64,000 nucleotides of DNA from Convolutriloba macropyga (lineage: Eukaryota). Made by a program: the position numbers and the translations under genes. The notes under the pieces were generated by a model. It was not told the DNA's origin. It saw only the letters and a program-made list of their open reading frames with translations, and made no database searches. The stretch is taken from positions 18,786,001-18,850,000 of the forward strand of contig NC_134482.1 in assembly GCF_964194025.1 (NCBI RefSeq). The letters run 5' to 3'. How positions within the stretch are numbered: the first letter of the stretch is position 1; each line of letters starts with the position of its first letter. Below are positions 12,780-43,540 of the stretch, piece after piece.

Positions 12780-15539
12780 ATATCAAGGAAGAAGCATAGG
12801 GATAAAGCTAACCAGCCAAACACTCAGTGCAGCCTTTTCTCCTCCATGAAAGCGCTATTTGAAGTCTCACTGAGAACACGAGGCTTGAGGGTGCTACATC
12901 CCCTCAAGCAGAGTACACAGCTCCTCAGAAGTGCGAAGCTGGTTTTCGTTCGGATGTAGCTTATAGTGTCGGCGTACGGCTCTCCGCGTTTTTCGCTGAT
13001 CTTGCTAGCGAGTTGTTTCATAACGCGCGATGCTGATGGCCCAGCACCGTATGAGCATGCAAAAACCACTGCATTGAAACTGCTGTGTTCGGTTTCGCGG
13101 ATTCGCTCTTCGTACTTATTTCGCTTGGTGCTCTCGTGTTATTTGTATGCATCTTTTATGGTCTTAGGGCAGCTCTTCGCGTGAGGGTTGAAAATCTTCA
13201 CATCGAAGAAAGTGCGATTAAAGCGGGAGCCCCAGAGACCGTTTGATTTGATGTCCAGTCGAGCGTCATCATCAGTAGTTGTGGAAATACTCGAGACAAT
13301 TTTTCCATTGAGCGACCGAAGTTTTGGCTTTATCTGGACATCGTGGCAAACCTCATCCATCAAGTTTGCAAGCACGTCTCCAATTTCGTTGTGTTGTAGG
13401 TGCGTATATCCGCCTTTGGCGCAATGTAGGGTATGAGTGAGGCTAAATTGTTTCCTGCATGGGCATATCGCTGCCGTGTTCTTCGCTTCCCAGGTGTAGC
13501 GAAGTGCTATTCCGTCACGGAACTCAGTCTTCGTGAGGTCAAAACTATGTTTTGATAACGGAAGCGCGTTAAGCCAGCTAGATGCTCCTTTATCGAGGCC
13601 AGCTGGATAGTATATTTCTTTTCTTGTAGATTGTTTTCGATTCTGGATTTTTTCGAGATGAGTTCACGTTGCATGTCTGGTTTCTGTCGGAGACTGATCT
13701 TTGTTTTTTCTAATTCACATTGTTGAATTTCGAATGAATCATTAGTGAATGACGCCAATGGACTTGAGAGTTAAATTAATTGCTCAAAATTTTTGTGAAG
13801 ATCTTGGAGGGCGATGTTAATCCCACCCATTCTGATAGGGAGAAAAAAGGTCTCTTTCCTCTTGGATTATTTCTTTGCTTACGGTGTTCGGTATGACTCG
13901 GCCAAGCCGCTCCTCCACCTTGTCTAGAACCCCGTGCATGGAAGGTGTAGTACGCGAGAGGAAGATCAACTTCTGTTGAACCCCCTTCGTCAAACATGCA
14001 TTGGCATTCTGGGGAGAGGTGAGAGCAAATTGACCAAGTCTGTCCCAACTTTTTGTGTATTTAATTTCTGCATTTTTCAGGATATTTTTACTGGCCTCAG
14101 ATCCACTGATAACTGATTCCAGGACTCGAGTGCCCTAAGTGATTTCCACATTTGTGCCTGCAAACACAGTTGAGGCTTGGCGCTCGCTTCCTGGCTTAAT
14201 TATCAACCGACACTTCGGAGGATTGAAAAGATATCCGTACTTGGGACCAAGCTGAGTGAGATTGTCGAAGAGTGCCCTGATATCTTTTAACTTACCGACA
14301 ACGCTACCATCATCAGCATACAATTTTTGTGTCAAGGAGTCATTGTGAAGTTTAATCTTAGGGTAGGATTGCGATTCCATACATTGCCATCGCAAGGGAA
14401 TCACCTTGTGTCGTACCTTGCTGAGACAGAATGCTGGGCTTACCAATGTAGAGATGAGACGGATGGCTATAGGAATTCTGTAAGGCATCAAGCAATGATG
14501 GTTGTAGGGCTTTCACGTTCTCTAATGCTGTTTGTCTATTGAGCACGTTAAATGCGTTTTTTTTGCATCAATTAGTAGAATTGCTTCGTTTTCGTGGTCA
14601 TCAAAACATTGGCGAAACGAATGTAGACCCGGCACTGCCTTGAGTCTTCATTGCATGCTTTCGGATGAACCTAGCACTGATTTTGTCGAAAATATTGGGG
14701 CTGGTAAGGAAGCGTGCGCGGATGTTTGCTCTGAATGCAGTTGGGCTCCAAGGGTTGCCCTTCAGGATGTTTGTCGCGTAAAAACTCGAGGACCGGTCAA
14801 CCGTCTTTGAGATAGGGAGGTGCGGGCACGCCGCCTTATGTTCATCCGCAAGAACACGAATAGCATTACTGATCTTACCACGAGACATGAAATCGTTGAA
14901 AATCTTGAGGTCAGAGTGCTGCTTTTTGTTTCTTGAATTCATTCTCATTTGGATTGCCTTGGCTTCACAGAACAGTTCTGAGAAGTTGCATCTGTCACAT
15001 GCACGCAATCTATGCTTGATAATCTTATTGTTCGATCCGTCGTCCGTGTTCTTTGTTCGACTGATAGTTAAGTGCAAAATTATCATACAGAGGGTCAGAG
15101 ATATATGGATCTATCCGTGTTTACGGCAATCGCGGAGAGGACACTGTGAAGGGCTTCGGCTAACTGTTCCCCTATCTTGTACTTACTGAGCATGAAGCAC
15201 GATGAACTAACATTCAAAACACAAGAAATTGTTCTAAAAATGAAATCAGTGAGAATGGTAAAACCTGACGTGATGAAGGAAGGTGGTTGGCATCAAAACA
15301 TCCCATTCGCGGAGCCTACTAACATGCAAAAACACAAGAAATTGTTCTAAAAATGATATCAGTTGGAATGATACGATCTGATGTGATGAGTTGGGGTGGG
15401 AGATTGGTTCACTCGCCTACGGCTGGGGTGGCGAGGCTTGAAAAGGTGTAGGTTTGATTCAGCCCAGCGCGCACACGTTTTTGAAAATACAGCGGAGGTA
15501 AATTTGCTCTATTTAATAAGTTTATTACAACAATTATGC
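12780..15539 (-). mobile_element. CRE-clade non-LTR retrotransposon (RT plus restriction-like endonuclease), frameshifted
   Basis: ORF pieces carry 'QGTTQGDSLAMAMYG', 'YADDG' and 'LGPKYGY', a Cys/His knuckle ('HTLHCAKGG...HNEI'), and the RLE motifs 'ARLDIKSNGLW..TFFDVKIFNPHA' and 'VFACSYGAGP'. The 5' end is the SL-like motif at 15509-15539. Confidence 0.85.
15509..15539 (-). other. SL-like motif copy A (GCATAATTGTTGTAATAAACTTATTAAATAG)
   Basis: 29/31 match to the consensus of the copies in this window. It lies at the 5' boundary of the CRE element. Confidence 0.75.
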
Positions 15540-15544
15540 TAAAA

Positions 15545-15880
15545 ATTAAGAATACTGGAGGACCACTCGGATATTGGTTTTCAGTCCAGATCTCTTGATT
15601 TTTCTTAAGAGCTACATCAAAGGATTGCCAGTCAGCAGTCGCATTAAAAATCCTATACACAGTCCCCTTAATCACAAATTTTCTTATGTTCTAACGGTGC
15701 ACAGCTACGGAAATTTGGGATTATACCGGTATCGGTTTTTTGATACCAATGACAGCTAATTTTCCTATCTTCATTTACGTTTATGTTTAGATCTAGGAAT
15801 GCCAGGTCTCCACTAGCGTTTGGTGTCTCAAGAGTGAATTGTTGTAATGTAGATTAATGTAGTATGGGATTTGATTTTGT
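15545..15880 (-). mobile_element. Penelope-like element RT C-terminal fragment
   Basis: The minus strand gives 'QFTLETPNASGDLAFLDLNINV', 'KTDTGIIPNFRSCAPLEHK' and 'KGTVYRIFNATADWQSFDVALKKNQEIWTENQYP', typical of the PLE RT thumb region. It may extend, degraded, to ~16400. Confidence 0.75.
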
Positions 15881-16718
15881 TTTTAGCCACGCAAAGACTA
15901 TTTTCATAGACAAAAAGCTCTTGGATTAACGAGCTTAAAATTTTTCTTGAAGGATAGGAGGACAACGGACTGATTGCTGGAGATAGCTTCTGTATATTTT
16001 GTAGTAGTAATAGTAGTACAGGATTTCGGATCTAGGCCCTCGGGTTTTTATTGTTTTCGGTTTTTGAATTAGATCATGAGTTGCGTCCATGAGTTTTCAT
16101 AGTGGATTGCAGCATCCACATAGTCAGAAAATTGTCCACGTGCATGTTTTCACCTCATCGTTAACGTTTTCGAAGTAGTGCCAATAAATTGTTAGCGGTT
16201 GCTTTAGCTGTCATATCAATAACTCGCGACATAATTGTAGAGTATCATAGTTCGTCTGAAAAAATTGCCGTCGGATTGTTTTGAGTCTGTTTCGGTATTT
16301 TGATTCCTTACTGCTACCTTGTGTATTGAACTGTACTTCACCAAAAAGCTTCATTTTTGCATGGTGTTTGTTGCTGAGTATCAATCCGAGAAGTAAATCG
16401 TGCAAAAGTAAATTCGAGCAGAAGAAAATTCGATATATCTTCTAGAATTCTGAATCATGTGTTTTGATTTATTTTTATTCTGATAGCTTCCGTGAATGTT
16501 TATATAGATATATCCTTAAGATAAGTTTCCGTAACTTTCGTAAATCGATACAATAGTTGAAATTGTTTGAAGCAAAACGTCCGATATGTCCCCTCAAATG
16601 CAAATTATCTTTTGATGACAGATTTTATCTCCCCATTATGAATTCATTATTTATGTCTTTTAGAGGATGGCTTCGCTTTCAATTGACAGTTTTTGAATCT
16701 GTTGATTTTAAGATTATC

Positions 16719-19333: not shown

Positions 19334-22300
19334 TCATATTTTTCGAAGCGAACTGAAACTCCACGCCAAATTAGAACACGGTTTCCAAAAAAACTAAATT
19401 CGGTCAATTTATCTCTTTTTCTGTTTCAATCCTGATCCGCATCAATCGCGTGTAAGGTGGCTATTTTCTGGCAATCTACCGGCTATGTTTTAAGTTTATT
19501 TTATTTAGAATCATTTTTTGATAAACTTATTAAACAGCCTTTCATTGATTCATCTTGTGTGGAAAACTTTTCTTGGGAGGGTTTTGAATACAATACGCTG
19601 AATGTAAATGAGTTATCACATCTTCAAGAGCTCGCCTGCTAAGGCCTGCTTACTTCTGGCCAATTCCCAGGCTCAAGATCTGTACAAAATCCTGCACTAT
19701 GAGTAAGAAGTCGAGTGGAAGTTCCACATTATTCGGAAACACGCGAAGAGAGTTTCGTATTAGACGAAAGCCCTCAACAAATAGAAAATTTTGCAACAAT
19801 TTTAAAAGAAAAAAATTTAAATGAAAAGCACAGCGAAGCAACCAACAAAAAGGCAACACTAGCGTTAGAGAGTGTATTCGTCTGGGCCAAGTCCCGGTAG
19901 TCGGTGATTGTTTCTCTAGCAATTAAATTTGAGGTATTTTTTTTATTTCCTCACAGTCTTTCAGTATCAATAGGAGTAGGTGAAAAAATTAATCAGCTTA
20001 TCTTATTCCGCGGGGTCCTTCAAGATATCCAGGAATAGGATAAATAAGCTTCTTGTCTTTTAAATTGCGCCGCAACATTCCGAAATGTCACAAAACGAAA
20101 AAAGCAGTACTGCAAAGTAACGCTGCCACAGACAAACAAATTACGAGCGTATCATGTAATACGACTGAAAAATAAAAAAATATTGTCATGGGAGCCGTTG
20201 AGTGATCCACTGGATAGAATAAGTCAGTTTGCATTTAATTTAGAAAATGCACCAAATAATATTGCAACCGTCCAAGCTGAAATCAAAAGCCTCAGAGCAC
20301 ACAGTGACGATGAACAAAATGTATCTGTACAAAAACAAGCTTGCTACGCTGAAGCCGTTAAAAGTACGGTCAAGTCAAACGGAACCATGGGTAAAAGAAT
20401 CCCCTGTGTTCGAGAGCTTTCAGAGGGTAGTACCAATACAAGATTGGAACACATAAATATGGTCATCGATTATCATGAAATACAGGAAGTTAAACTAACC
20501 AGGGTATTAATGCTTGGCAAAGTAGATCGATCCAAAACAACACCATATACAATTGTCATCAACTTGGAAAATTCCTTTAGAAATACTCACTTTCAAAGAA
20601 GCGTATCAAACTTGACTATAAACCGGAAAACCAATTAATTTTTAGTTCAGAGTTTTAATCTTGAACGTTGCTATGTCAACAAACGATGCCCTATTACGTC
20701 GGCAGCTGATTGAAACTGTTTTTAAACCCCAACTTTTTTGTATCAGAAATTTTGGAGTTAAATACGGGAAAACAACAGCTGGTTTATCGGACGACACGGG
20801 ATCGTCAATTTACTAATTGAAGTTACAATTAAGGTTCTAACGTTGTTAAATCTGAGATGCCGTACAATATTTGCGATTGCTCTGCCGACAAAGAATTGAC
20901 ATTATTTGAATCGCAGAAACGTGACTCACTCCCAAAATCTTCATTGTCACTCTTTTTCCTTGCCTATCAAGACTAGAGAAATTATCGAAAGTCTGCAGTC
21001 ATGAAAAGCAAACATGGAGGGGTGCTCAATGCAGTAGAAATGCTCTGAAACGCGAACTGCTCATTTAAAAAATGTGACGCCAGTTTTCCTACTTCTAAAG
21101 ACGAATAAACGGCTCTATCTTGATTGGTTTCTCCTATAACACGACTGAAGTTTTTATCGTTGGACAGAGAGCAAGATGCTTACGGTTCTTTTGGATCGTG
21201 AACAACTGAAAGCAACAAATATGCGAGGTCAGATTTGAATGTCAGCTAATGATTATGAAAATACCATCCATGAGTTTGACTTTAACTACACAATTGTTCT
21301 CACACTCAATTGGTTGTTTTTTTTACAATACGGAACTAATAACTCACTCCTTCATCGACTCGTTAGTTAAAGATTACCAAATTAACTGAAAAAATCCGAT
21401 CACCTTCCCTCATGCTAACGTCATTTTTGAGTGCCTTGTTCCATATGTTGCCACTGACATATATCGCCTCCAAAAAAGCAGATTAGGAAGCTTTTCAGTG
21501 GTATGTTTGGTGATAACTATGCCTTTCAACCCCAACCTCTTTGACAACCTAAATTTCTTGGCTCGATGAAAAATAAAACAGAAGTTTCCAAAAATAAAGA
21601 AAGAAAGAAAGAAATTATTTCTCACGAGTACAAAATATAAATCTATTAAATATAATTTATTTATGAAGAGACTCGGAGGGGACAGACAACCGGACTATGT
21701 GTCCTCAAAATCCTGCCATTCGTAGTTGAACTTACTTGTGTAATAGTTGCTCAATAGTAAAAGAGAAAAAAAATGAGAAATTTAAATTTTTTTCGAATTT
21801 TTTTTTCATGAGTTTTCTGTTCTTTTAATGGAAAATCAACCAAGAGCTTAACCATAGACGACTATTAACAGCTACGGTTGTAGACGAGCCTTAATTGAGT
21901 TTACAAGAATTTTTTTTTGAAAGTTCAGAATTTTTCAATTTGCAACAGAATCGCAAATTTTTTTTAAATGATAGCCATATCTCCTGAAATATTGGTCCTA
22001 GAGGGGTCATTCTTTTTCACCAGAAAGCCAACTATTTTTGGGTACTCCTGTAGCATGCAGGCAAGGGGTATGGATTTTTTGGGTACCTATAAGGAAAAAT
22101 TATATGACCAATTCGTCATTATGGAGAATAAGAAATCTTTCAATTTATGATAAAAATTACTCAACTCTTTTGAATTTTGGTTTTCAGCATTATCGAATAG
22201 GTTTTGTTTGGCGAGGCAGTTGAACAGCTTTCTAGCACGGTACTTTACTGATAGTCTTTCAATTTTTTTCTTACAAATCGGTTCATGAAGGACATTCAGG

Positions 22301-29282: not shown

Positions 29283-31575
29283 TCGAAATAATCCCACACT
29301 GTTTTCCTAGTCTCTTTTTCACATAATCTATATGAGCAAGAAAAGATAGTTTGGAATCTAATCTTAAACCAAGATACTTACATACTTGTTTAAGAGAAAC
29401 TGGACAATTATTTATAGTAAATGATGGAAAGGAAGCACTCATGTTTATATTCATTTGTACAGTTTTTTCTATGTTAAGAGATAACTTGTTTGATTCAAGC
29501 CAACAACTTATCTCTTTCAGATCTGATTCTATTTGAGTCCTATTACATCCTATTGAGGATATATTTGTGTCATCGGCAAAAAGAATTATATCAGTATGTT
29601 TGCTACACTCAGGTAAGTCATGAATATATATTTTGAACAACAAAGGTCCAAGTATTGATCCCTGTGGAACTCCACAGTTCACTTTTCTCCAATTCGATAA
29701 ATGACCATTTATTTCAACCTTTTGTTATCTGTTTGCGAGGTATGATTGAAACCACTTCAAACAATTGCCACGAATACCATATCTTTCTAATTTCCAGAGC
29801 AAAATTTGATGATCTATTGTATCGAATGCCTTTTTGAGGTCAAGGAAGAAACTTAAAACTGGCAGATCATTGCAATTTCTAATTTTTTCAATAAATTCTA
29901 CGAGGGCATCAATTGTACTTTGTTTAAGTCGAAAGCCAAATTGTTTGCATGAGAATAGCAAATGCTTTTCAAAAAATGGTATACTCTGTTGTACATAACT
30001 CGCTCAAAAATTTTGCTCCAGATACTCAACAAAGATATAGGTCGATAATTGTTTTCATCAGTTTTATCACCCTCTTTATGAAGTGGAATAACTTTAGCTT
30101 CAGCGAGAATCTTTGGAAACACACCTTCCCTAAATAACATGTTAATTAGTTCACAGAGAAATGGAGCGATAATATCCGAACTGATCTTTATCAAGATGTT
30201 ACTCAAATTATCTAGACCAGATTATGATTTACTATCAAGTTCATTCATGATGCTTAGGATTTCCTCATCGGAAGTTTTATATAAGAACATGGATTTATTA
30301 TTACACGTGATTGATCTCAATGGTGCATCTGGTATTTTCGAGGCAATCTTCTTACTAATATCTGCAAAATAGTCATTAAAAGAGTTAGCAATCTCATCAT
30401 TTGTCACGTTTAAACTAGTACTTGATTTGAGAAATGGTACATTTTTACTCACTTGATTTCTACCGGAAAGATCCTTAAGTAATTTATATGTTTGTCTTGA
30501 GTCTCCTATGCAAGATTCGAAACGATTCCCGTAAAAATCTGTTTTGGCAATTTTGACTGAATTTTCAAACTTGGTACGTAATCTCTCGAAGTTATTTAAA
30601 TGACTGATGTTTCTTGTGCTTTTCCATTTACGATGAGCCTTGTTTTTATATGTTCTTAGATTTTTAATCTCATTGGACACCCATTTTGGATTCTTATATG
30701 ACTCATTATTGAACGTTCTGAAAGGAGCGAATTCATCGGTTATCTGAAGGAAAAACTTTTGAAATTGATTAAAAGCTGCATCAGCATTAACCGCATTCAG
30801 TATTGTTGTCTTATAGGCATGCATAAAATTTTTCAATTCCGATTTATATCGACATATCTCTCTTACATTTTTTAGGAAAGACGTATCACGGTATTTGAAT
30901 GTTGGACTAACATCGCAACATTTTCGCCATTTAATTAAGACTGGATAATGATCTGAGAAACTTTGATGATCAAGTACAAGGCCTTCGGGTGATGTCATAT
31001 TTTGGTGGACTATATGATCTATGCAAGTTTTGGATGAACTTGTAACTCTGATTGGGGCGGGTTCAAATAAATCAAATCCAGTTGAAACTATTGTGTTTTT
31101 GTAATTTTTTACTAGTTGATTTTCTTTGAAAATATCGAGGTTCAAATCACCACACATTATAAATGGAACTTTTGTTGATGAAAAGTTTTCCATTGATATA
31201 TCCATTTTCTCAATGAATTCGGTTTTGTTGTTCCTAGGCGGATTATATATAACTAGTACTCTAAACATGTTATCACCCTTACATACATCAGCCATTAGTG
31301 CTTCATCCAAATTAGTACTTATTTCTTTCATCAAGGTGTAATCATTTTTCACTTGAATCATTACATCACCACCTTTAGAGATACGGGTTTTAGCTATTAA
31401 TTGATTATAGCCATGAACTAAGTGACATTTCGGATCATCATTTTCTGTTAACCAAGTTTTGCTTAGACATAAAACAGAAGGAGGAGACTCAAGACCAGGT
31501 ATAAGTGCTTCCAAATTGTCCAGGTTCTTTTTTATGGAACGTACATTGATATGCATAATAGTTACTTGATTAAGT
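28726..31575 (-). pseudogene. LINE ORF2 (APE endonuclease plus reverse transcriptase), disrupted
   Basis: Consecutive ORF pieces 30222-31643, 29898-30206, 29725-29961 and 28726-29682 together give the canonical domain order. Confidence 0.9.
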
Positions 31576-32596
31576 TCCTTTTTTGGCATTCCAAAACTTA
31601 GTATTTTTATCAGTTGCATTTTTTCCTGACTCAGTATCAACATTATCAGTAACTTTTTCCTTGGTAACTTCCTTCAAAGCCAGCACTAGCGCGGGAACAA
31701 GATTTTTCACAATATCATTTACCAAGTTGGGATGGTCATAAGGCGTTTCATCTTTCTCCATTGATGGGGATAGCTGCATTCTTTTTCGTTTCACACTTTG
31801 AGTAACAGTGCTCATGGGTTTTCGGGTCAAATTAGGCATTTGCATGGGCGTATTGATACATTTACCAATTTCAAATACCGGTTTGGGTGGTGTAGACTTC
31901 TTAGAAAGACCCGGGGCAACAAAATCACGGAGTTCATTAGTTGATTTAACTTGAGCAGCATCAGCATTGGGCAGATTCTGGTTGTAGGCATAGACATCTT
32001 GTTTCCTAGTAAAAGTTAGAAGGCCCATTTGTTTTGCTTCAGTTCTACTTCCCGGTCCCGCGGAGCTAGATATTCTTCAATTTGTACGGGTCGTCCTAAT
32101 GAATTGCTCATGCCCTTGAGCCAGGTTCTTCTTCGCCATATTAAATCACGGTCCTGGTGATATATAAACTTCACGATTATAGGGGCGTTCGGGCTTTGGT
32201 TTAATGGGTGACACGCTGCTAGGCTGGTGGGGTTGAAATTTAGTTGCAAAATCTGTTTGAAGAGAAACATAATGCTTGATAGTGCGTCGCCTTTGCATTC
32301 GACTTTGTAGAAACTTAGGCACAGTTTTCTCGAGTACTTTTCAAGTTCAACAATTCGCTCATCCCGTTTGTGTATTGCATTTAAGTTGATGTTCATCATA
32401 TCTTTCATGTGTCCTTGACTCTGTTTAAGCCTCCTCAGTTCACTGTCCTGCTTTATTATCATTCGCATCATTTTTCGCATAAGATCTTTCATCGTCGAAC
32501 CCACATCATCGTCATCATCTAGTTTTTCAACTTCGTCCGCAATAGAGTCAACGTCAACTTAAAGCATTCTTCAAGATCATCAAATTCCATGTTCAT
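31570..32596 (-). pseudogene. LINE ORF1 (coiled coil plus L1-type RRM), frameshifted
   Basis: Reads 'ERIVELEKYSRKLCLSF...ACHPL...PIIVKFI..QDRD'. The ATG at 32596 is 3 nt after SL-like copy B. Confidence 0.8.
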
Positions 32597-32599
32597 TCT

Positions 32600-32631
32600 C
32601 TATTTTAATAAGTTTATCACAACAATTGGGC
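32600..32631 (-). other. SL-like motif copy B (GCCCAATTGTTGTGATAAACTTATTAAAATAG)
   Basis: Internal to the LINE and directly before the ORF1 ATG. Confidence 0.75.
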
Positions 32632-32781
32632 TAATAATCCAATTACTGACAACGGGGAACCTCAAGGTAGCCTTTTGCGATCAGCACTGTGAGGGGGGAA
32701 TGTAAGAGACCTCAATCTTAACCTCTTCCAGCGGAACCTCAAGGTAGCCTAATCTGGAAGAACAAAAAGACTAAGAGTAAC

Positions 32782-33430
32782 TTACTTTACCAGGTACTGC
32801 AGATACACCGACAGTCCTTTGCTGTACTTCTTGTATAACACCTTCTCCTTGATGAGATTGCGCAGATTGTTTAGACCGTCTTCGTTTAAGTGAATGAGGT
32901 CCTTTTTGCTGAAGTACCGTGCACCTGTTAAGTATTGTTTGACGGACCTGTAGTTCCACTCTACTTTACAGGGCTTTTTGGGTTTGCGTTCAGCTACGTA
33001 CTGTAAGAGGTCGTTGACGGCTTTCGTTCTTGTTTTGTTTTCGTCACGTTCTGGCACTCCCAGCACGAAGACAGAGGGTGCTCGGTTGCAAAGGAAGTTT
33101 GCGAGCTCAACAATATCGTCTGCTGCTTTTCTGGCAGAAGTAAGGGAGAGTTCAGTGAAATTGTAAAGGTCATCACCTCCAATGAAATGAATTATGATGT
33201 CAAACAGACCAGCTGGGGGGACGTAGTCGTAGGCGTGTCTGACAGGCACCTGGTAGGGAGACAATATTGAGGTTGCCTGCGTCCAGGTAGCGTGCCTGAG
33301 AGTGCAAGAAGGAAGTACTTCGTCGATGATGTTCTGGTGACGTGATATCTGGACTTCTTCCTCTCTGACATTCAGGACCTTTTCTCTAAAATCCTCCAAC
33401 GGGAGGCCTTCCACAAAAGGTCGCAAGCAT
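32782..33430 (-). pseudogene. Stand-alone SGNH/GDSL esterase-like ORF of the LINE
   Basis: Contains 'FIGGDDL' (block III) and 'DLIHLNEDG' (block V DxxH). An alternative frame near 33300 gives 'YFLLA-SQARYL...IVSLPG' (blocks I/II). Confidence 0.7.
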
Positions 33431-33437
33431 TACAAAT

Positions 33438-33468
33438 CTATTTAATAAGTTTTTCACAACAATTAGGC
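33438..33468 (-). other. SL-like motif copy C (GCCTAATTGTTGTGAAAAACTTATTAAATAG)
   Basis: 30/31 match to the consensus. An ATG follows 7 nt downstream, and two partial copies lie upstream at 33469-33501. Confidence 0.8.
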
Positions 33469-33739
33469 TTTCACAACAAATCATCATTATCACAACAAAT
33501 CACGGTGCAACGTGCAGCACTTCATCGTGGATCTCATCACTTCTATAAAGCGTCAAACATAATAAAGTGCCTTAAAAAGAGATCAACAGGAAGGTTATTT
33601 TTGCATTGTTCAAAAAAGTGGAAAAGACTTGAAACGAAATTCAAGGATCCAGTGATATGGAAGTTTGCAGTTATTGAAAATTGATGTTTCTGTAAAATTC
33701 GAAAATCCACCCCTACAAAAATCATTGACCTGAAATCGT

Positions 33740-35140: not shown

Positions 35141-35149
35141 TCGTCCAGT

Positions 35150-35409: not shown

Positions 35410-35483
<74 letters not shown>
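35410..35483. repeat. (TCA)n microsatellite, about 25 units; the (GAT)n 3' tail of the L2 element
   Basis: Perfect trinucleotide run about 230 nt downstream of the RT stop on the minus strand. Confidence 0.9.
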
Positions 35484-36840
35484 GTTTGTTTATACACTTC
35501 TTTCTTCAGACTCAGAAGTGTACTGTTTCGTATTAGGAGTAAAAATGTTCACGGAAAAGAAATGTTTTTAAAGCTGATTTGAACTGATCAACTCCATTCT
35601 GTTCTCTGATCCACTTGGGGAGTTTGTTCCACAAGACAGCACCTTGGTAATCAAAAGCATCTCGTCCAAGTTTTGAAGACCTTTTGAGTACAACCAATAC
35701 CACTCCATTTCAGGAAGTTTTTGCTCGTTTTTCAAACACGTCTAAATAGTCTGGAATCAGATCTTTGTGAAAAAGGCTTTTGTAGACAAGCAGAAGTATT
35801 TTAAAACGAATTCTCATATAAATCGGCAGCCAGTGATGGTCATGAAGGTGAATTGATATAGAGCACCAAGGATGTAGCCGGTAATCAAATCTACATGCCC
35901 GATTTTGGACCTTTTGGAGAATGGACAATTTTTTCATGCCAAGTCCGTTAAGGATCGAATTGCAGTAATCTAGGCGACTCATGATTAAGCATCTAACCAG
36001 CAGTATGCGTGTTTCAAAATCAACAAAATTTCGAAGAGAGTGGAGTATTCGGAGGTAGTGAAAGCAGTTTTTGGCAACAGTTTTTACTTGCTTCTCCATG
36101 TCAAGGTGTTTTTCAATTGTAACGCCAAGGCATTTCAGGGAGTTAGATAGCTTTACTTCAACGTTTCTGACTTTTATGGAGCTGATACTTGGCGCATTCT
36201 TTACGCTTGAAATGAGAATGGCTTCTGTTTTACTTTCGTTAACCTGTAGGCCAGCATTCGCAAACCAGTATAAAACTTTTTTCATTACTTCCTGGTTTAC
36301 TTGACTTAACATTTCTTCAATTTTCGTAAGTTCATTCTTCAAAAATTCTTTTTCGGATTTCTTATCGGATGAGCAATCGTTACAGCACCACAGAAGGGTG
36401 CCTGTTTTGACAAGAGTTACATCTAGTGAGGGGTAGGCACAGGATGAATGAACTTTTTTCGAGCATACATGGCACTCCATTGAGTTTTCCGTAATTTTAC
36501 TCGAGCAAAGAACGCATTGCTCAGTGATAAAGAGAGAACAAGTGTTCTGACTCGCCTCGTCAGTTGGTGGCGTGCAGTCGGTCGAGAGGGCGTCAGTTTC
36601 CATCGTAGAGTCCACACAGACAACCACTATCACGATCGCACTCGAATGTTCTTTCCGGACCAAGGTTGTTGAGTTCTTTGCTGTATTTTTTAAAAAGGAG
36701 CTTTTCTTTGATGAGGTTTTTAATGTTATTCACTCCTTCTGAGGTCAGATGAACGAGGGCCTTTTCCTTGTGGTGATGGTTCTTCAGGTGACGAAATTGA
36801 ATGTACTTAGATAGACTGAGGAACTTGGTAGATAGACGGA

Positions 36841-39287
36841 GGTAATCAAATCTACATGCCCGATTTTGGACCTTTTGGAGAATGGACAATTTTTTCATGC
36901 CAAGTCCGTTAAGGATCGAATTGCAGTAATCTAGGCGACTCATGATTAAGCATCTAACCAGCAGTATGCGTGTTTCAAAATCAACAAAATTTCGAAGAGA
37001 GTGGAGTATTCGGAGGTAGTGAAAGCAGTTTTTGGCAACAGTTTTTACTTGCTTCTCCATGTCAAGGTGTTTTTCAATTGTAACGCCAAGGCATTTCAGG
37101 GAGTTAGATAGCTTTACTTCAACGTTTCTGACTTTTATGGAGCTGATACTTGGCGCATTCTTTACGCTTGAAATGAGAATGGCTTCTGTTTTACTTTCGT
37201 TAACCTGTAGGCCAGCATTCGCAAACCAGTATAAAACTTTTTGAATGGTAAGTTCAACGGAATTTGCATTGAAGATGTTTTGAAGAGCATTCAAAGTAGA
37301 GGATGGTGTCATCAGCATATAGTTGATAATTTACTTTAATTTCTTTGAGTAGGTCACCCAACGGTGTAAGATAGACACTGAAAAGCATAGGCCCAAGAAT
37401 GGAACCCTGAGGTAAACCAGAATCGAGAAGTGCAGGTTTTGAGACTGAATCGTTGACTAAAACAAGTTGTGTTCTTCCCAAGAGATAAGACTGAAGCCAC
37501 TTTTTGGCTGTATACCTTATGCCAAAACGATCTTCACAAATATGTAAGAGAACTTTGTGGTTCAGTGTATCAAAAGCCGCCTGCAAGTCGAGAGCCACTG
37601 TAAAAACAAACGAATGTTTATCAAGCATCTTTCGTGTGTTCATGAAAGTATGCAATAAGGCAGTTTCTGTGGAGAAAGTTTCACGGTAGGCGGATTGCTG
37701 ATCATCTAGGGGTGAGTTCACATTAAAATAACTTATAATTTGCTCAAATGCAAGACATTCAAGGACTTTGGATAAAAAGATTAGGTTACTAATAGGTCTA
37801 TAATTTGATAGAATTTCAGGATCAAGACTTTCATTTTTCAGCTTGGGAATCACTATCGCAATCTTGAAATCATCTGGAAAAACTCCTTGTTCAAATGACG
37901 TATTGAAAAGTAAGATTATTGTAGGCATAAAAGATGCTGAGAAATCTTTAAACACTGTAGATGGAATTACGTCGTGGTAGCTATTCGATGCTGATGTTTT
38001 CGCTAGGGCCCTTTGTAAGCTTTCCTCACTGACAGCTGCAAATTTTGCAAACCGAGGCGAGATTTTATTGCAGTGTACAGTAAACTTGGAAAATTTCGAG
38101 GTGATTTTGCAGACTTTTTTCCGGAAAAAGATTACAAATCTTTCAGCTAGGGCGCTTGCGTTCGTAAAACTCGGGGGCTTTAACTCACAGCCTTTCCCTA
38201 GGAGTGAATTCAAGATCTGGAACTTTTTTCTGTCTGGAGCTTTTGAAATATCACAAAGATTTTTGTCAAAGAATAATTTCTTTTTTCTATAGTAGAGATT
38301 TTGGTACTCTATAGCCTTGCTGAGGTCACTCTGAGCTGCTTTTGTCCGTTGTTTTCGGAATTCGCGCTCTTTTTTCCCTTTGTTCTTTTTTGATGCTATG
38401 AGATCGTCGTCGAAAAATGGGCATTTCTTGTGAAAACCTTTTCGTTGAATCGGTGGTGCATAGAAATCAACGTAACTACGAATGATGTCTAGGAACCATT
38501 TACATAAAGTATTCGGGTCGTCTGAAGTTCTAAGCGTGATTGCTGATGATATTTCAATTTCCTCGGCAACATTTTTCCAAGGCACTCATTTTAAATTGCG
38601 ATATGTGAAAGGGCGATTTCTGTGTTTTGGTTTATCAGAAACCGGCATGCCAAACTCAATCAAAAAATGATCACTGAAATCCAGTTGCTGAACAATCATT
38701 GGACAATTTTCGTAGTGTGTGGGCAAAAAGACTTGATCCAAAGTGTTACCATGTTTATGCGTGGGTTCGTGAACACGTGCTGACAACTCTAATGTGCTAA
38801 ATAGTTCCAAGATCAAATTTGCATATTTATTTTGGGTATTAAAATGGAGATTGAAATCGCCTAGGCAGATGACTTCATCGTAATCCAACGCCAAGGGGAC
38901 AACTTTTTCAGAGAATTCATCGTAGAACTTCAGGGATGAGGTACCAGGTATATGGTAAACAACTAGGAAGAGATAGGGCTTGGAGTGGAGCTTCAATTCA
39001 ATGGCTAACATCTCAAACGTGTCTGTTAGAGCAAAATCAATTATTTTGGCGTGAAAATTCACTTTATATATGAAACAGAGGCCGCCCCCTTCTCGTGAGA
39101 CCCTGGCATGTGAGTAATGAGAGTAGTTGTCTGAATGTTCGTAGCACTGCTCAAGAAGAAATTCCTCGTCCGAACGTTGCCACGTTTCACATAAAATAAA
39201 AACATCTGGATTGGATAGCATTATAAGTGAACTGATTTTCGAGCACTTGTTTCTCACTGATCGCGAATTCAAGAGGCCAATTTTCAT
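36841..39287 (-). pseudogene. L2 ORF2 (APE plus RT) with one in-frame TGA (38586-38588) and one frameshift (~37250-37320)
   Basis: ORFs 38586-39287 and 37254-38585 are in the same frame. The reading continues in 36593-37318. Confidence 0.88.
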
Positions 39288-39314
39288 TGAGTCCTTGAGC
39301 CGCTCAGGGAGTAG

Positions 39315-40217
39315 TCAGCTTCTGGGAAGATTTTTGAGCCACTGCCAGGCTCTTTCGTTCAGTCTGAACCTTCCAATGAGAATCCCTTGAGGCCAATTTT
39401 CAGCTTTTTCAATTTCTTCAATATCTTTTTCTTGAAAAACCGCATGGAAAGATTTATATGGTGATTCTTGTTTTGAGACTTCTCTGATATGTAGCAATTC
39501 TACACCAATTCCGGTACAGTATTGTTTGATATCGTCGTCGGTTGTTTCTCGTTGAGCCATACCTATGTACACATGCCTCCTGGACAGATTGGGTTTGCGA
39601 GGGGGGATAGCCTTGAAATTTGAGTTTGCAGATCCATCTCCGACTGCAATGATAGGGGCTGGCTTCACTGTTCTCTGTTTCGTTGGAGCTGCTTTTGGAT
39701 CGGCCGCTTCATTCGTTGAATGGAAAGTTTTCCGTTTCTTTGACTTCTGAGAGGAATCAGACATCATGCTGGATTGAGAGGGCTCACGAGATCGTGAGTC
39801 AAACCTCTTTGACTTCAGGATCTCAGCAAAAGTTAGATGAGATGCCGTGGCCGCTGTAGGCGCTGAGTCGGAAGATTCGACACGCGAGCGAAACTTCATT
39901 ACTTCCTGGTTTACTTGACTTAACATTTCTTCAATTTTCGTAAGTTCATTCTTCAAAAATTCTTTTTCGGATTTCTTATCGGATGAGCAATCGTTACAGC
40001 ACCACAGAAGGGTGCCTGTTTTGACAAGAGTTACATCTAGTGAGGGGTAGGCACAGGATGAATGAACTTTTTTCGAGCATACATGGCACTCCATTGAGTT
40101 TTCCGTAATTTTACTCGAGCAAAGAACGCATTGCTCAGTGATAAAGAGAGAACAAGTGTTCTGACTCGCCTCGTCAGTTGGTGGCGTGCAGTCGGTCGAG
40201 AGGGCGTCAGTTTCCAT
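39315..40217 (-). CDS. L2 ORF1 with N-terminal PHD finger, coiled coil and C-terminal RRM-like domain (intact)
   Basis: Contains CVLC..CHVC..HSSC..WCCNDC (C4HC3) and 'RHVYIG...SFHAVF...ENWPQGILIGRF'. First ATG (METDAL) is at 40217. Confidence 0.8.
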   Translation of the reverse strand: METDALSTDCTPPTDEASQNTCSLFITEQCVLCSSKITENSMECHVCSKKVHSSCAYPSLDVTLVKTGTLLWCCNDCSSDKKSEKEFLKNELTKIEEMLSQVNQEVMKFRSRVESSDSAPTAATASHLTFAEILKSKRFDSRSREPSQSSMMSDSSQKSKKRKTFHSTNEAADPKAAPTKQRTVKPAPIIAVGDGSANSNFKAIPPRKPNLSRRHVYIGMAQRETTDDDIKQYCTGIGVELLHIREVSKQESPYKSFHAVFQEKDIEEIEKAENWPQGILIGRFRLNERAWQWLKNLPRS

Positions 40218-40819
40218 CGTAGAGTCCACACAGACAACCACTATCACGATCGCACTCGAATGTTCTTTCCGGACCAAGGTTGTTGAGTTCTTTGCTGTAT
40301 TTTTTAAAAAGGAGCTTTTCTTTGATGAGGTTTTTAATGTTATTCACTCCTTCTGAGGTCAGATGAACGAGGGCCTTTTCCTTGTGGTGATGGTTCTTCA
40401 GGTGACGAAATTGAATGTACTTAGATAGACTGAGGAACTTCCACTTCGACTCTTTGGCTAACTTGGTAAGGATCTTATTGATTTCGTCCGCTCTCTAACA
40501 GTGAGTCCCTCTCTGAGGAATTCCCAGGATATAAACTTTTTTATAGCGTTCGGCAGTGAAATCGCCCAGTTTCTTGTTGTTTGGCAATCAGAGTTGCTGG
40601 TGTGGCCGACGGGATATTGTTATCGAAAGCGTTGTTCCCACCGATGAAAATAATGAATGTTTCGCACCGCTCAGTGCTCGGGAGATAGTCGTATGAGTGC
40701 TTGACCTGACCTCCGGGAAGCGACAAAACTGAGAAATTTCCAGTGAACAGGTCTTTAACTTGCGAGTCAGATATCATAAAAACTTTCGTTTGAGCTCTTC
40801 TAAAGATGTGATATCTCAT
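40207..40819 (-). pseudogene. Stand-alone SGNH esterase-like ORF of the L2 element (frameshifted near 40545-40580)
   Basis: Contains 'FMISDSQ', 'LSLPGG', 'FIGGNN', 'LVHLTSEG' and 'IKEKLLFKKYSK'. It aligns by eye with 32782-33430. Confidence 0.72.
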
Positions 40820-41090
40820 CTAAAACTCTGGTGAAACCTGAAGGTATCTGTGGAGTTTAGATGAGATGGTGATGAATGGAGATTACTCCGAAACTCCGGT
40901 GAAACCTGAAGGTATCTGTGGAGTGTGAAAGGAGCACTGTTAATTGCTTTCAGATATAGAACAATAACAGCTTGCAGATAAAGAATTGCTTGCTTCCAGA
41001 TATAGAACAATAACAGCTTGCAGTTTGTGCACTTTTAATCATCAATCAAGGGCATCCACGGCTACCCTGATAATCAAAGCAGATCTGAAA

Positions 41091-41121
41091 CTTTTTAATA
41101 AATTTATCACAACAATTAGGC
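41091..41121 (-). other. SL-like motif copy D (GCCTAATTGTTGTGATAAATTTATTAAAAAG)
   Basis: 29/31 match to the consensus. It lies about 50 nt inside the 5' end of the L2 element and is followed by TTTCAG. Confidence 0.75.
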
Positions 41122-41172
41122 TAAACCTAACCCCACAAAGCTCACGTGTTACCATGCAACTCTGCTCTGCGC

Positions 41173-43540
41173 TCTATTTGATAAGAAACTTCTCAATCCA
41201 TTAAATCGCCTTTACACGGATACTCTAGCAACAGTTTTCTTTGTATTTCATGATCGAGGAAAGCAAATGCTTTTTAAAACAAAAAATTAGAAGAGTTAAT
41301 TTTTTGATGTCTTGGTCTCTCTGCCAGCTCGGCCAATGAGTCATCCAATTTGGAGCCAGGTTTGCGGATGGGTATTGTCTTTGCCCGTTGTAATTCACTT
41401 GGGAGAAAACCTTTTTTTAAACCCATATTCATTAATCTTGTGAGACGCGATATAAGCTCAGGGGCAATAAATTTCAATAATATATTGCTTAGATGACTGT
41501 CTCCAGATGAGAACTTATTATCCGAGTCATTGAATATTTCCTGAACTTCTGGTTCATTCACGGGGAAGAAAAACATGAAAAATGAAAAACTCTCAGGAAA
41601 ATGAAGGACATTAGGGAGAGATACTTTAAGGTTTTTCACTTACAGAGCTAAAAAAATCGATCAGTATTTCAACAATTGTCAAAGGTGACGGTAAATCAGA
41701 GCACGTTACGTATTGTGAGAAAGCTGGCAGAGTATGGTCTTTAACGGATTGACCTTTTAAATCATTTAATGACTTAAATATTTGCCTTGAGTCTCCAATA
41801 CGAGATCGAAACCTCTTTTAATATTGATTTTTTGAGGTCTCCACCTCTTTGGCAAAATTTTCCCGCAGCTTTTTGCATTTTTTTTCATATTGTCAACATT
41901 AGGGTCCATCTTCGATTGTCTGTGCAATTTATTACGTTTGGAGCACAAACTTTTTCGCCTATTGGAATACCATTTAGCTCTTATTTCTGCACTTTGCCAA
42001 TGGAGAGAACTGGTATGTTACCTCAGAGACAACTTTATGGAAATAAGCAAATGAATCATTTTTGTGATTATTGTCAACTAGAAAATTCTGTGTTAACAGT
42101 AGTTCAGGTTGTAGAAAACCAATATCTCGAAAAATACAATTGCTCGTATATTAATGCCACAGGAAATGAAGATTCGGAACGGATCGGTTAAATTCTGATT
42201 TTCAGGTACTCCTGCTAAACTTTTGTATATTTTTTTGATAAAAAGTTTGTATTTTTTTGATAAAAAGTGAGCAAGGCAGGTGGAACATTCATCAATTACT
42301 CTGGTTGTTTTTTTCGACCAACATGTCAAATTCATTTGATTCGATGATGTTTATATACTGCTTCGTGAGATAAATTTTAACCAACATGTCTTAAAATCTC
42401 CAGACTGCTGTTGGTTTTGAACTTGGTATCTTTTCATGACACATCAGAATCCTCCAGGAATGCCATCTTTTTAGAGCTTGGAGGATTATAGCAGGAAAGT
42501 GAAGATAGAAGTCAGGACAGTGAAGATAGAATAATTTTTTTTCTGAAATTTCTGTTTCTTCAATCAAATTGACATCTCTATTTATTTTGATAGCACTACA
42601 TGTCCTAGAGTCACGAGCTTTAGAGGAAAATGATTATATTCTTTAATTATTTTTTAGCCAAGTTTCACTTAAGCAAATTATAGACGGTGGGGGCTAAAGG
42701 CTGTATACTAGTGCTACAAACTTAATTGTTTTTCTTCAGCGATCGCACATTCAAATGCTGTTTATAAAGGGTACTAAAATTGCGCAGTGCATTAACTGGA
42801 GATTTTTTTAAAGTTTCAAGATTATGAATGCTTTGTTAGTTTCTGGTTTCTTTTGCTGATCTTTGTTAATCAATATTTCACATTGGCGCTTCAATGTCTC
42901 AAGGATGTTTCTGCCAGTTTTTTTCTACCTCATCATGCTCATGTTTGCATTATGTCGACAAAATCTTGCAATGATTGGGCTTCCAGCCGGATCCCTCGAT
43001 GGCTGACGCTGGGAAATAGATAAACCTTCAATATTAAATGTTTTTCATAGCTTTCCAAATATCTACATTGGTTTTCAATGTGCAATCCGCGAACTTCTGC
43101 TCACTGTTCTCTGGAATTCGTGTGATTCGGTTGTTGTCGCGCCGGTTATAAGTTTCTAGTTCCTCAGCGTCGATGTTTTGAGATTGCAAAGCCTTTCTTG
43201 GAAACATGAATCTGCCGTAAATACATCCTGCACTTCATCCTTCACAGCTGCGATGGATTCTTCAATCATGTAGTTGGTAAATTTTTGGCAATATTTTTTG
43301 TATGGCATCCTCTATCCTTTGCATCGGCTCATTTTCGTCTTCTAAAATAGGATTTCAAGGCTCTTTTCTTATCAAGTGGTTTAACTGATGTAGGCGGAGT
43401 TTGGCCTTGATAACGGAGAACTGGTCGGGCAATCGAGTGTTCCAGACCAAAGGTATCATTAGTGTCGGTCTTTGTGCTAGCATCAATGTCTGCATTTTCA
43501 TCTCTGAAACTATTTAATTAGTTTATCACAACAATTAGGC
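41173..43540 (-). mobile_element. Older, degraded Crack-like LINE (ORF1, APE, RT N-terminus)
   Basis: ORF 41274-41639 reads 'NKFSSGDSHLSNILLKFIAPE...AKTIPIRKPGSKLD', with 'IGDSRQIF' near 41790 and APE remnants at 42100-42800. It starts with SL-like copy E. Confidence 0.8.
43510..43540 (-). other. SL-like motif copy E (GCCTAATTGTTGTGATAAACTAATTAAATAG)
   Basis: 30/31 match to the consensus, followed by TTTCAGAG-ATG. Confidence 0.8.

What the first reader, a model, noticed from the sequence alone, without database searches (positions are those of the whole stretch)
15509..43540. The same 31-nt spliced-leader-like exon heads retrotransposons of three different clades
Seen: the motif GCCTAATTGTTGTGATAAACTTATTAAATAG (at most 2 differences) occurs at 15509-15539 (CRE), 32600-32631 and 33438-33468 (Crack-like), 41091-41121 (L2) and 43510-43540 (older Crack-like). 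A degenerate copy lies at 19505-19537 and its two duplicates. Each copy is sense to its element and at the 5' end or just before an ORF (ATG 3, 7 and 8 nt downstream in three cases). It ends in AG, and apart from a few bases the flanks are unrelated. Known: SL exons are short, AU-rich, often end in AG and are joined just upstream of start codons. From memory the motif resembles an SL reported from acoels; this is unverified. Inference: unrelated LINE families have captured the host SL by reverse transcription of trans-spliced RNA and kept it as a DNA-encoded leader, possibly for translation or host-mRNA mimicry.
Basis: partly seen in the sequence, partly recalled or inferred. Interest (0 to 1): 0.95.

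Follow-up and report, generated by a model that had tools for sequence, protein, structure and literature searches.

The report
Host spliced leader heads many LINEs
In this acoel-type worm genome, roughly a thousand LINE retrotransposons from several unrelated lineages begin with a DNA copy of the host's 31-base spliced leader, so their RNAs were trans-spliced like host mRNAs before being copied back into the genome.

Summary
The motif lies on the minus strand at all five stated sites, each at the exact 5' end of a LINE or just before one of its ORFs.

It is the host spliced leader (SL). It equals the published Symsagittifera roscoffensis SL. About 1,500 copies are SL RNA genes (GT donor, Sm-like site, two hairpins) in arrays on contig C9.

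About 1,000 further copies are dispersed. Of 30 sampled blind, 27 sit directly upstream of sense LINE ORFs, and two more share a LINE 5' leader. These cover three architectures with an apurinic/apyrimidinic-type endonuclease (APE) and one lineage lacking it, with restriction-like endonuclease (RLE) motifs.

In four families a "long" copy (SL + leader ending TTTCAG) pairs with a "short" copy in which the SL is fused exactly after that TTTCAG. This is the signature of trans-splicing followed by retrotransposition.

Stacked leaders, a composite SL-ORF0-SL-ORF1-ORF2 element and inherited spacer variants show that the leader persists in master copies.

No RNA run could be obtained, so any present-day role (self-renewing acceptor, translation) is inferred. 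Clade names (CRE, Crack, L2) could not be verified.

I found no paper describing this. Five other first-stage notes on this genome report the same pattern. I rate it a new variant of a known kind.

The parts
15509..15542 (-). SL head (TTA + leader, 2 mismatches) of element A, the RLE-type LINE
   Evidence: 29 genomic copies of this family's 5' end, nearly all directly behind an SL end
12757..15508 (-). Body of element A, decayed. RT YADD at 14309-14320, CCHC-like motif at 13448-13465, D..DVK motif at 13196-13261. The 3' end is lost in the N run 12622-12756
   Evidence: Relatives L074 and L087 have an N-terminal PHD finger, with RT beginning about 230 aa in and no APE domain
33438..33470 (-). 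First SL head of composite element B (1 mismatch)
   Evidence: Three other copies (90% identical) start exactly here
32635..33437 (-). ORF0 unit of element B (214-aa ORF at 32782-33426, no Pfam hit)
32600..32634 (-). Second, internal SL of element B (TTA + leader, one substitution and one extra A), with ATG 3 nt downstream
   Evidence: Four other copies start exactly at this leader
28235..32599 (-). Element B ORF1 (pieces 32016-32504 and 31570-32028), APE (30222-31643), RT (28726-29682) and 3' UTR. The 3' end is approximate, near a (TTTC)n run
41085..41124 (-). SL head of element C (TTA + leader, 2 mismatches) followed by a TTTCAG spacer (41085-41090)
   Evidence: Sister copies carry a truncated SL + TTTCAG (L062) or SL fused without TTTCAG (L063)
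35412..41084 (-). Element C body: PHD-finger ORF1 39315-40277, APE 38586-39287, RT 37254-38585, internal 100% duplications, (GAT)n tail 35412-35483
43504..43543 (-). SL head of element D (TTA + leader, 1 mismatch) + TTTCAG spacer, with ATG 8 nt after the leader
41190..43503 (-). Element D body. It is decayed (ORF1a-type and APE remnants) and appears interrupted by element C
19516..19537 (+). Partial SL-like 3' fragment (18/20), repeated at 22823-22844 and 26168-26189. It is not the head of a repeated element

Best explanation
The motif is the exon of the host's spliced-leader RNA. LINE transcripts in this animal are SL trans-spliced at ordinary 3' splice sites (typically TTTCAG|) in their 5' leader or in upstream flanking sequence. 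These transcripts probably often start from neighbouring promoters. When a trans-spliced RNA is reverse-transcribed to its 5' end during target-primed insertion, the leader becomes the first 32-34 bases of the new DNA copy.

This has happened in several unrelated LINE lineages, and the leader is then transmitted as part of the master elements, a few bases upstream of the first ATG. Repeated rounds explain four patterns: long and short forms, stacked leaders, 5' transduction of flanking sequence (including a whole extra ORF0), and copies that start at an internal leader.

Shown: the identity of the motif with the SL, its position at LINE 5' termini, junctions at acceptor sites, and inheritance of leader-linked variants.

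Inferred: that the encoded leader, whose last bases are ...ATAG, is itself re-used as a trans-splice acceptor. Under that reading, read-through transcripts regenerate a capped, full-length template without the element needing its own promoter.
For: Identity with the host SL:
- The motif equals the published S. roscoffensis SL.
- About 1,509 copies continue with GTAA, in arrays on C9.
- The gene RNA folds into two hairpins around a single-stranded U-rich stretch, z = -5.6.

Position at LINE heads:
- Among the first 30 exact hits on contig C1, 27 have sense LINE ORFs immediately downstream. Nine have ORF1a, six ORF1c + APE, seven PHD-ORF1 + APE, and five are RLE-type.
- Two more share a LINE 5' leader, and one is followed by a sulfatase-domain ORF.
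- Upstream flanks within families are unrelated.

Trans-splicing signature:
- L021 (SL + 30 nt ending TTTCAG) pairs with L004 (SL fused right after), with 368/370 identity downstream.
- The same holds for L007/L006, L013/L008 (383/395) and window C/L062 versus L063.
- SL+TTTCAG occurs 290 times, and no SL gene has such an extended exon.
- Only the exon, never the SL intron, is attached.

Persistence in master copies:
- All 53 copies of a 20-nt start module sit behind the SL, either directly or via a 6-nt spacer whose variants (TTTCAG, TTTTAG, TTCTAG) each recur in 7-15 copies.
- The RLE-type family shows two recurrent junction forms.

Re-capture:
- L001 carries SL + 27 nt + an older SL + the element.
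- Composite B recurs in three more copies starting at the first leader, and four copies start at the second.

Independent data:
- A separate ENA assembly holds a full-length copy with an exact SL head, ORF1, APE-RT ORF2 and a (TTC)n tail.
- Contigs from four DNA runs reach the leader from both flanks at the two sites laid, elements C and D.
Against: No RNA data could be obtained, and the four listed runs behave as DNA. Trans-splicing of these elements today, and re-use of the encoded leader as an acceptor, therefore rest on DNA footprints only.

In the RLE-type family some junction variants (leader joined 3, 9 or 11 nt before the same element sequence) do not follow an AG in the longer form. 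Part of that variation needs another cause, such as an indel in a master copy or untidy 5' joining.

The blind sample is small (30 loci, with 1.5 kb downstream each). It contains only perfect leaders, so it is biased toward young copies.

Target-site duplications were not established.

That this genome is S. roscoffensis itself is inferred from the identical SL, GC content and size. It is not given.
Confidence: 0.85

Rival explanations
1. Target-site model. The elements, above all the RLE-type one, are site-specific for the SL sequence, as CRE1, SLACS, CZAR and NeSL-1 are. The leader upstream of them would then be the interrupted target, not a captured 5' end.
For: RLE-bearing LINEs that insert into SL genes are known (papers listed). 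Another first-stage note (s1-200734) reports a CRE-like copy with a 14-bp duplication inside an SL-like motif. All copies of the RLE-type family abut the leader's 3' end with variable junctions, which resembles untidy R2-type 5' junctions. The 3' end of window element A is hidden by an N run.
Against: None of the 29 copies of the RLE-type family lies in the C9 arrays, which hold about 60% of all leader copies. The leader upstream is always complete, including the extra TTA, and its own upstream flank is neither the SL promoter nor shared between copies. A related RLE-type family has the usual LINE-head spacer (TTTCAT) between leader and ATG. APE-type families show junctions exactly at acceptor sites.
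Confidence: 0.05
2. Template-switch model. The LINE reverse transcriptase jumps from the 5' end of LINE RNA onto abundant SL RNA, as in U6-L1 chimeras in mammals. No trans-splicing would be involved.
For: 5' junctions are untidy. Partial direct or inverted leader pieces lie just upstream of several heads (L005, L024, L038, L083, window 33486-33500), so template jumps and snap-back do occur at these ends.
Against: A jump onto SL RNA would bring in its 3' part (the intron), yet only the exon is attached, ending exactly at the donor site. Fusion points coincide with the base after TTTCAG in the sister long form in four families.
Confidence: 0.03
3. Captured once, then self-sufficient. The leader was acquired by trans-splicing but now serves as, or lies next to, an internal promoter that starts transcription at its first base. 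It would be inherited as plain DNA and not renewed by further trans-splicing.
For: Spacer and junction variants are inherited with the leader. Copies start at the same base as the SL gene transcript would. From memory: in Ascaris the SL sequence is an intragenic promoter element of its own gene.
Against: LINE heads lack the conserved upstream block of the SL genes. Stacked leaders and short forms show that fresh trans-splicing keeps occurring. Of the first 100 dispersed leader copies listed, 95 have a canonical 25-nt leader core, even though the LINE families that carry such heads share only 40-54% ORF1 protein identity. That is easier to explain by renewal from the host SL pool.
Confidence: 0.12
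4. Chance similarity or assembly artefact.
For: None found.
Against: Shuffles give 0 expected hits. The reversed control gives 0 against 2,493. An independent assembly shows the same leader head, and four DNA runs hold sequence up to the leader on both sides at the two sites laid.
Confidence: 0.01

Closest known systems
Dinoflagellate retrogenes with relict DinoSL (PMC6050394, PMC5585692, PMC12014239)
   Same: The spliced leader of a trans-spliced RNA is copied into DNA at the 5' end of a retroposed copy. Repeated rounds leave several leaders in a row.
   Different: There the copies are host genes, and the older leaders are 5'-truncated because the new leader is spliced onto an AG inside the old one. 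Here the carriers are autonomous LINEs of several lineages, the leaders are complete, and stacked leaders are separated by transduced sequence.
SL-carrying transposon transcripts in Hydra (PMC12220107; about 30% of TE Iso-Seq reads start with an SL)
   Same: Transposon RNAs use the host's SL trans-splicing.
   Different: That is an RNA-level observation. A DNA-encoded leader at LINE termini, junction pairs and inheritance in master copies are not described there.
SL-gene-specific LINEs: CRE1/CRE2, SLACS, CZAR (trypanosomatids) and NeSL-1 (C. elegans)
   Same: LINEs are physically linked to the spliced-leader sequence. One lineage here lacks an N-terminal APE and carries RLE-like motifs, as those elements do.
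   Different: Those elements insert into SL genes, so the leader is their target. Here the leader-headed copies are dispersed, none of 29 lies in the SL arrays, and the leader is their own 5' terminus. A separate, truly array-specific LINE does exist here, but it abuts the leader with its 3' end.
HDV-like ribozymes at the 5' end of R2, L1Tc and other LINEs (PMC3185411, PMC3383444)
   Same: Both are ways for a promoter-less LINE to obtain a defined 5' end out of a longer co-transcript.
   Different: The ribozyme cuts itself free and leaves an uncapped end. Here the host spliceosome would supply a capped leader, and the processing signal is host-derived.
L1 5' transduction and U6-L1 chimeric retrocopies (from memory)
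   Same: Upstream sequence or a small nuclear RNA ends up at the 5' side of a LINE-mediated insertion.
   Different: Here the added piece ends exactly at a splice donor and is joined exactly at splice acceptors. That points to splicing rather than read-through alone or template switching.

Membership tests
Spliced-leader RNA gene / SL exon | Exon sequence found at the 5' ends of many unrelated host mRNAs | tested here: met
   The motif is identical to the SL reconstructed from unmapped transcript 5' ends in S. roscoffensis, where 30% of genes are trans-spliced (PMC9911081). This is by literature only. It could not be repeated on RNA of this assembly.
Spliced-leader RNA gene / SL exon | Exon followed directly by a GT splice donor | tested here: met
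   ATAG|GTAAGTAT in the gene copies; 1,509 hits with GTAA.
Spliced-leader RNA gene / SL exon | Sm-type single-stranded site flanked by hairpins in a short RNA of about 100 nt | tested here: met
   Hairpin 1 pairs the leader's 3' half with the intron. A free U-rich ...AUUUG... stretch follows, then a 10-bp hairpin. MFE -34.1, z -5.6. No Rfam family matches.
Spliced-leader RNA gene / SL exon | Multicopy tandem arrays | tested here: met
   Units of 1.06-2 kb on C9 at about 23.1-23.8 Mb and 62.06-64.45 Mb.
APE-type non-LTR retrotransposon (CR1/L2-like group) | ORF2 with an apurinic-type endonuclease followed by a reverse transcriptase | tested here: met
   Exo_endo_phos and RVT_1 in elements B and C, and in L092 ORF2. 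An APE ORF lies within 1.5 kb of the leader in 23 sampled loci.
APE-type non-LTR retrotransposon (CR1/L2-like group) | ORF1 with a PHD finger, and a short-repeat 3' tail | tested here: met
   PHD finger in C ORF1. (GAT)n tail of C and (TTC)n tail of L092.
APE-type non-LTR retrotransposon (CR1/L2-like group) | Placement in the named clades L2 and Crack by RT phylogeny with reference elements | not testable with these tools
   No reference LINE library was available. B and C are deeply divergent (APE 21.6% identity) and have unrelated ORF1 types.
RLE-type non-LTR retrotransposon (CRE/NeSL/R2 group) | RT not preceded by an APE domain; N-terminal zinc finger | tested here: met
   In L087 and L074 a PHD finger lies at residues 8-52 and RT begins near residue 233, with no Exo_endo_phos hit.
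RLE-type non-LTR retrotransposon (CRE/NeSL/R2 group) | CCHC motif and a PD-(D/E)XK-type endonuclease after the RT | tested here: inconclusive
   Motifs are seen by eye in window A (CPC..H..C, then LD..17..DVK). There is no Pfam, PDB or Atlas support.
RLE-type non-LTR retrotransposon (CRE/NeSL/R2 group) | CRE-clade hallmark: site-specific insertion into SL genes | tested here: not met
   0 of 29 family copies lie in the SL arrays, and the window copy has a non-promoter upstream flank.
Retroposed copy carrying a relict spliced leader (dinoflagellate type) | DNA-encoded leader at the exact 5' end of a retroposed sequence, with unrelated flank upstream | tested here: met
Retroposed copy carrying a relict spliced leader (dinoflagellate type) | Older leaders truncated by splicing onto an AG inside the leader | tested here: not met
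   The leader has no internal AG. Stacked leaders are full-length and separated by 27 nt to 0.8 kb.

The most novel reading that the evidence does not exclude
SL trans-splicing is a regular step of the LINE life cycle in this animal. The DNA-encoded leader would be a self-renewing 3' splice site, with a branch-point-like CCTAAT 26 nt before its terminal AG. Any read-through transcript would then be cut and capped exactly at the element's first base. That would be a third solution to the LINE 5'-end problem, beside internal promoters and HDV-like ribozymes. The same mechanism would let LINEs pick up new upstream ORFs by splicing further upstream, as in the SL-ORF0-SL-ORF1-ORF2 composite.
Probability: 0.45. 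Interest if true: 0.88.

Novelty: new variant of a known kind. Interest (0 to 1): 0.8.

Why it matters
How LINEs without a strong internal promoter keep producing full-length, translatable RNA is a long-standing question. Here several unrelated lineages carry the host's own leader as their first bases. The DNA footprints show repeated trans-splicing before insertion.

If the encoded leader works as a renewable acceptor, it is a new way for a genomic parasite to borrow host RNA processing. It also gives a natural tag for full-length insertions, for 5' transduction and for the capture of new ORFs by LINEs.

The idea can be tested directly in other SL-using animals such as Hydra, flatworms, tunicates, rotifers and nematodes.

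There is a practical consequence too. About 1,000 genomic leader copies will disturb SL-based gene annotation and operon calls in this genome.

Tried and rejected
RNA evidence:
- The four runs listed behave as DNA: uniform depth near 66 and a total contig length near genome size.
- A second search restricted to RNA-Seq listed none.
- A Logan contig with a leader-headed ORF1 (L091) starts inside the leader exactly where a 31-mer graph would break. It therefore says nothing about an RNA 5' end.
- A search for transcript-derived proteins of the gene downstream of CSN1 found only 56-70% relatives.

More loci:
Downstream classification therefore rests on 1.5-kb flanks.
- One look-up timed out.

Other checks:
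- Extended-exon idea: no SL gene has TTTCAG before its donor, so this was rejected.
- Host first-exon source for the 20-nt start module: no copy without a leader was seen among 53, so this was rejected.
- Inheritance test with rare leader variants. The variants AAAAAG and AAATTT occur in 10 and 3 SL genes, and in 4 and 2 of the first 100 dispersed copies. This was too weak to separate renewal from inheritance.
- RLE domain confirmation by Pfam, PDB sequences and Atlas gave no usable hit.
- TRF found no array because the 3.3-kb period exceeds its limit.
- Rfam found no SL family.
- A target-site duplication for L092 was not evident.

Full report
OBSERVATION

The 31-nt motif occurs four times in the window at 1-2 mismatches, all on the minus strand: 15509-15539, 33438-33468, 41091-41121 and 43510-43540. 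None is expected in shuffles. The fifth site, 32600-32631, differs by one substitution and one extra A.

Each copy is in sense with the retroelement ORFs that follow it. The first ATG lies 3, 7 and 8 nt downstream at 32600, 33438 and 43510.

The 'degenerate' copies are on the plus strand at 19516-19537, 22823-22844 and 26168-26189. They match 18 of the last 20 leader bases. They do not head a repeated element: a high-copy repeat ends just before them, and the sequence after them exists only in this local 3.3-kb triplication.

WHAT THE MOTIF IS

A full-text search found the exact string in the genome paper of the acoel Symsagittifera roscoffensis. There it is the trans-spliced leader reconstructed from unmapped transcript 5' ends, and 30% of genes are trans-spliced.

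The window's genome is 1.18 Gb with about 37% GC in this window. It holds 2,493 copies at <=2 mismatches, against none for the reversed control. Of these, 1,509 continue with GTAA.

These copies are tandem units of 1.06-2 kb on contig C9, at about 23.1-23.8 Mb and 62.06-64.45 Mb. The sequence after the exon is a consensus donor (GTAAGTAT). The RNA folds into a hairpin that pairs the leader's 3' half with the intron, then a free U-rich stretch with AUUUG, then a 10-bp hairpin (z = -5.6). This is the architecture of an SL RNA gene. Rfam has no model for it.

WHERE THE OTHER COPIES ARE

About 1,000 copies are not genes. 606 have a perfect 25-nt core and are not followed by G.

As a blind sample I took the first 30 perfect hits on contig C1, with 1.5 kb on each side. 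Downstream ORFs were clustered with each other and with the window's elements, then scanned against Pfam.

Twenty-seven loci have sense LINE ORFs starting within a few to a few hundred bases of the leader:
- Nine have one ORF1 type (ORF1a), seven of them with a recognisable APE ORF within the 1.5 kb.
- Six have a second, unrelated ORF1 (ORF1c) plus APE.
- Seven have a PHD-finger ORF1 (six with a recognisable APE ORF downstream), like window element C.
- Five belong to a lineage with an ORF0 and a PHD-RT protein without APE, like window element A.

Two further loci share the 5' leader of one of these families. One is followed by a sulfatase-domain ORF, a candidate retrocopy of a host mRNA.

Flanks upstream of the leader are unrelated even between copies that are 97-99% identical downstream. 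The second refutation criterion (no enrichment at retroelement 5' ends) therefore also fails.

An independent ENA assembly contains a full-length copy: exact leader, 312-aa ORF1, 872-aa APE-RT ORF2 and a (TTC)n tail. At the two sites laid (elements C and D), contigs of four DNA runs reach the leader from both flanks.

HOW THE LEADER GOT THERE

In four families there are two junction forms.
- L021 has the leader plus 30 nt ending in TTTCAG. L004 has the leader fused to the very next base, with 368/370 identity after that point.
- L007/L006 and L013/L008 (383/395) behave the same way.
- In the window's element C family, two copies have leader+TTTCAG and one has the leader fused directly.

A fusion exactly after a consensus 3' splice site, involving only the exon part of the SL RNA, is what trans-splicing produces. 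It is not what a template jump onto SL RNA or a target-site insertion would produce.

Leader+TTTCAG occurs 290 times, and no SL gene carries such an extended exon.

The bases before the leader are A (55/60), TA (45/60) and TTA (36/60), the same as in the SL gene. The cDNAs therefore reached the true 5' end of an SL that is 1-3 nt longer than published.

Untidy 5' joins are common: partial direct or inverted leader pieces, and short duplications of the flank. They fit reverse transcriptase reaching an RNA end.

PERSISTENCE AND RE-CAPTURE

A 20-nt start module, encoding MSQRGM, heads two unrelated ORF1 types. All 53 copies retrieved, those whose 15th upstream base is A or T, sit behind the leader, either directly or through a 6-nt spacer. 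The spacer variants TTTCAG, TTTTAG and TTCTAG each recur in 7-15 copies. The leader-plus-spacer is therefore inherited in master lineages.

The family of window element A has 29 copies. At least 26 abut a leader end, with two recurrent junction forms.

L001 carries leader + 27 nt + an older, mutated leader + the element. That is a transcript that began upstream of a leader-headed source copy and was trans-spliced again.

Window element B is leader-ORF0-leader-ORF1-ORF2. Three other copies (90% identical, on other contigs) start exactly at the first leader and run through the second. Four start exactly at the second. So LINEs both gain upstream ORFs and shed them through this route.

WHAT IS INFERRED

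The encoded leader ends in ATAG and contains CCTAAT 26 nt upstream of that AG. It could therefore act as branch site, tract and acceptor for a new leader, regenerating itself from any read-through transcript.

This would explain two things. Leader+spacer forms persist although use of the spacer's own AG deletes the spacer. And of the first 100 dispersed leader copies listed, 95 have a canonical 25-nt leader core, even though the LINE families that carry such heads share only 40-54% ORF1 protein identity.

It remains an inference. No RNA run was obtainable. An internal-promoter role is the main alternative for maintenance.

RIVALS

The target-site model is serious only for the RLE-type lineage, because CRE-like elements elsewhere target SL genes and another first-stage note reports a leader-derived duplication. 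Against it:
- None of the 29 copies lies in the arrays that hold about 60% of all leader copies.
- The leader is always complete, with a non-promoter flank.
- A related RLE-type family has the usual LINE-head spacer between leader and ATG.

Some junction variants in this family do not follow an AG, so part of that variation has another cause. The 3' end of the window copy lies in an N run (12622-12756) and was left unread.

COMPARISON WITH WHAT IS KNOWN

Three things are known. Leaders are copied into DNA at the head of retroposed host genes in dinoflagellates. Hydra transposon transcripts carry SLs, about 30% of TE Iso-Seq reads. And there are LINEs that insert into SL genes.

Six full-text searches found no description of a DNA-encoded host leader forming the 5' terminus of autonomous LINEs of several lineages. 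The library does not cover all journals.

The clade names CRE, Crack and L2 could not be tested. What was tested is endonuclease type, ORF1 architecture and depth of divergence (APE of B versus C is 21.6% identical).

EARLIER NOTES

Five other first-stage notes on other pieces of this genome describe leader-headed LINEs. Notes on this window describe the two-leader element and the TTTCAG spacer.

One note places the leader about 50 nt inside the L2 element. Sister copies diverge immediately upstream of the leader, so the leader is the family's 5' end. A 12-mer resembling a leader end lies 52 nt further upstream (41174-41185) and may be a remnant of an earlier round, or chance.

VERDICT

I rate it a new variant of a known kind, of high interest. 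The functional step is still to be shown with RNA.

Noticed in passing
L044, L045, L048, L055, L056 (SL array on C9); 46 junctions genome-wide: A different LINE (RVT_1 + zf-RVT, with a C-terminal CCHC) ends with its 3' tail exactly at the first base of the SL exon. 44 of 46 such junctions lie inside the two SL arrays. This is a truly SL-gene-specific LINE in an acoel-type genome, and it replaces the gene's promoter-side flank.
   Followed up: partly
60 dispersed leader copies (L001-L090 and window): The copied leader is preceded by A (92%), TA (75%) or TTA (60%), as in the SL gene. The real SL exon is probably 32-34 nt, 1-3 nt longer at the 5' end than the published sequence.
   Followed up: yes
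window 32600-33470 (-) and three other loci (C4:46.73 Mb, C16:16.70 Mb, C12:6.54 Mb): Composite element with two leaders (leader-ORF0-leader-ORF1-ORF2). It was retrotransposed as a unit. Four other copies begin at the second leader.
   Followed up: yes
L003, L005, L008, L012-L014, L016, L082, L084, L092; 53 genomic copies: A 20-nt module giving the first six codons (MSQRGM) is shared by two otherwise unrelated ORF1 types and always follows the leader. This suggests exchange of 5' heads between LINE families.
   Followed up: partly
L038, L083, L005, L024, L001; window 33486-33500; L019-L021, L025: Just upstream of leader heads there are partial direct leader pieces, inverted leader pieces abutting the leader, or 10-20 nt tandem duplications of the flank. 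These look like template jumps or snap-back at the RNA 5' end.
   Followed up: no
window 35880-37242 and 39895-40440: Element C carries two 100% identical internal duplications (40440-39895 = 36826-36281; 37242-36841 = 36281-35880). This is either a very recent rearrangement or an assembly problem.
   Followed up: no
window 41174-41185 (-): A 12-mer matching the leader's 3' end with one mismatch lies 52 nt upstream of element C's leader. It may be a truncated older leader with transduced flank; chance is not excluded.
   Followed up: no
L027 (C1:73.05 Mb): A perfect leader is followed 0.85 kb downstream by a sulfatase-domain ORF. It is a candidate leader-tagged retrocopy of a host mRNA, and the only non-LINE case among the 30 sampled.
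   Followed up: no
C9:62.58-63.78 Mb and C9:23.72, 63.51, 64.45 Mb: Rare SL gene variants exist: ...AAAAAG in 10 genes and ...AAATTT... in 3 genes. The same variants appear in a few percent of LINE heads, including window element C.
   Followed up: partly
L074 2274-2340 (+): A leader with a mutated end, followed by sequence resembling the SL intron. It is a candidate SL RNA pseudogene, next to an RLE-type leader-headed element on the other strand.
   Followed up: no
window 45796-46560 (+) and 46823-46911: A CSN1 exon (PCI domain) is followed, 260 nt after its stop, by a TTTCAG and then the ATG of the next gene. It is untested because no RNA was available.
   Followed up: no
   Followed up: no
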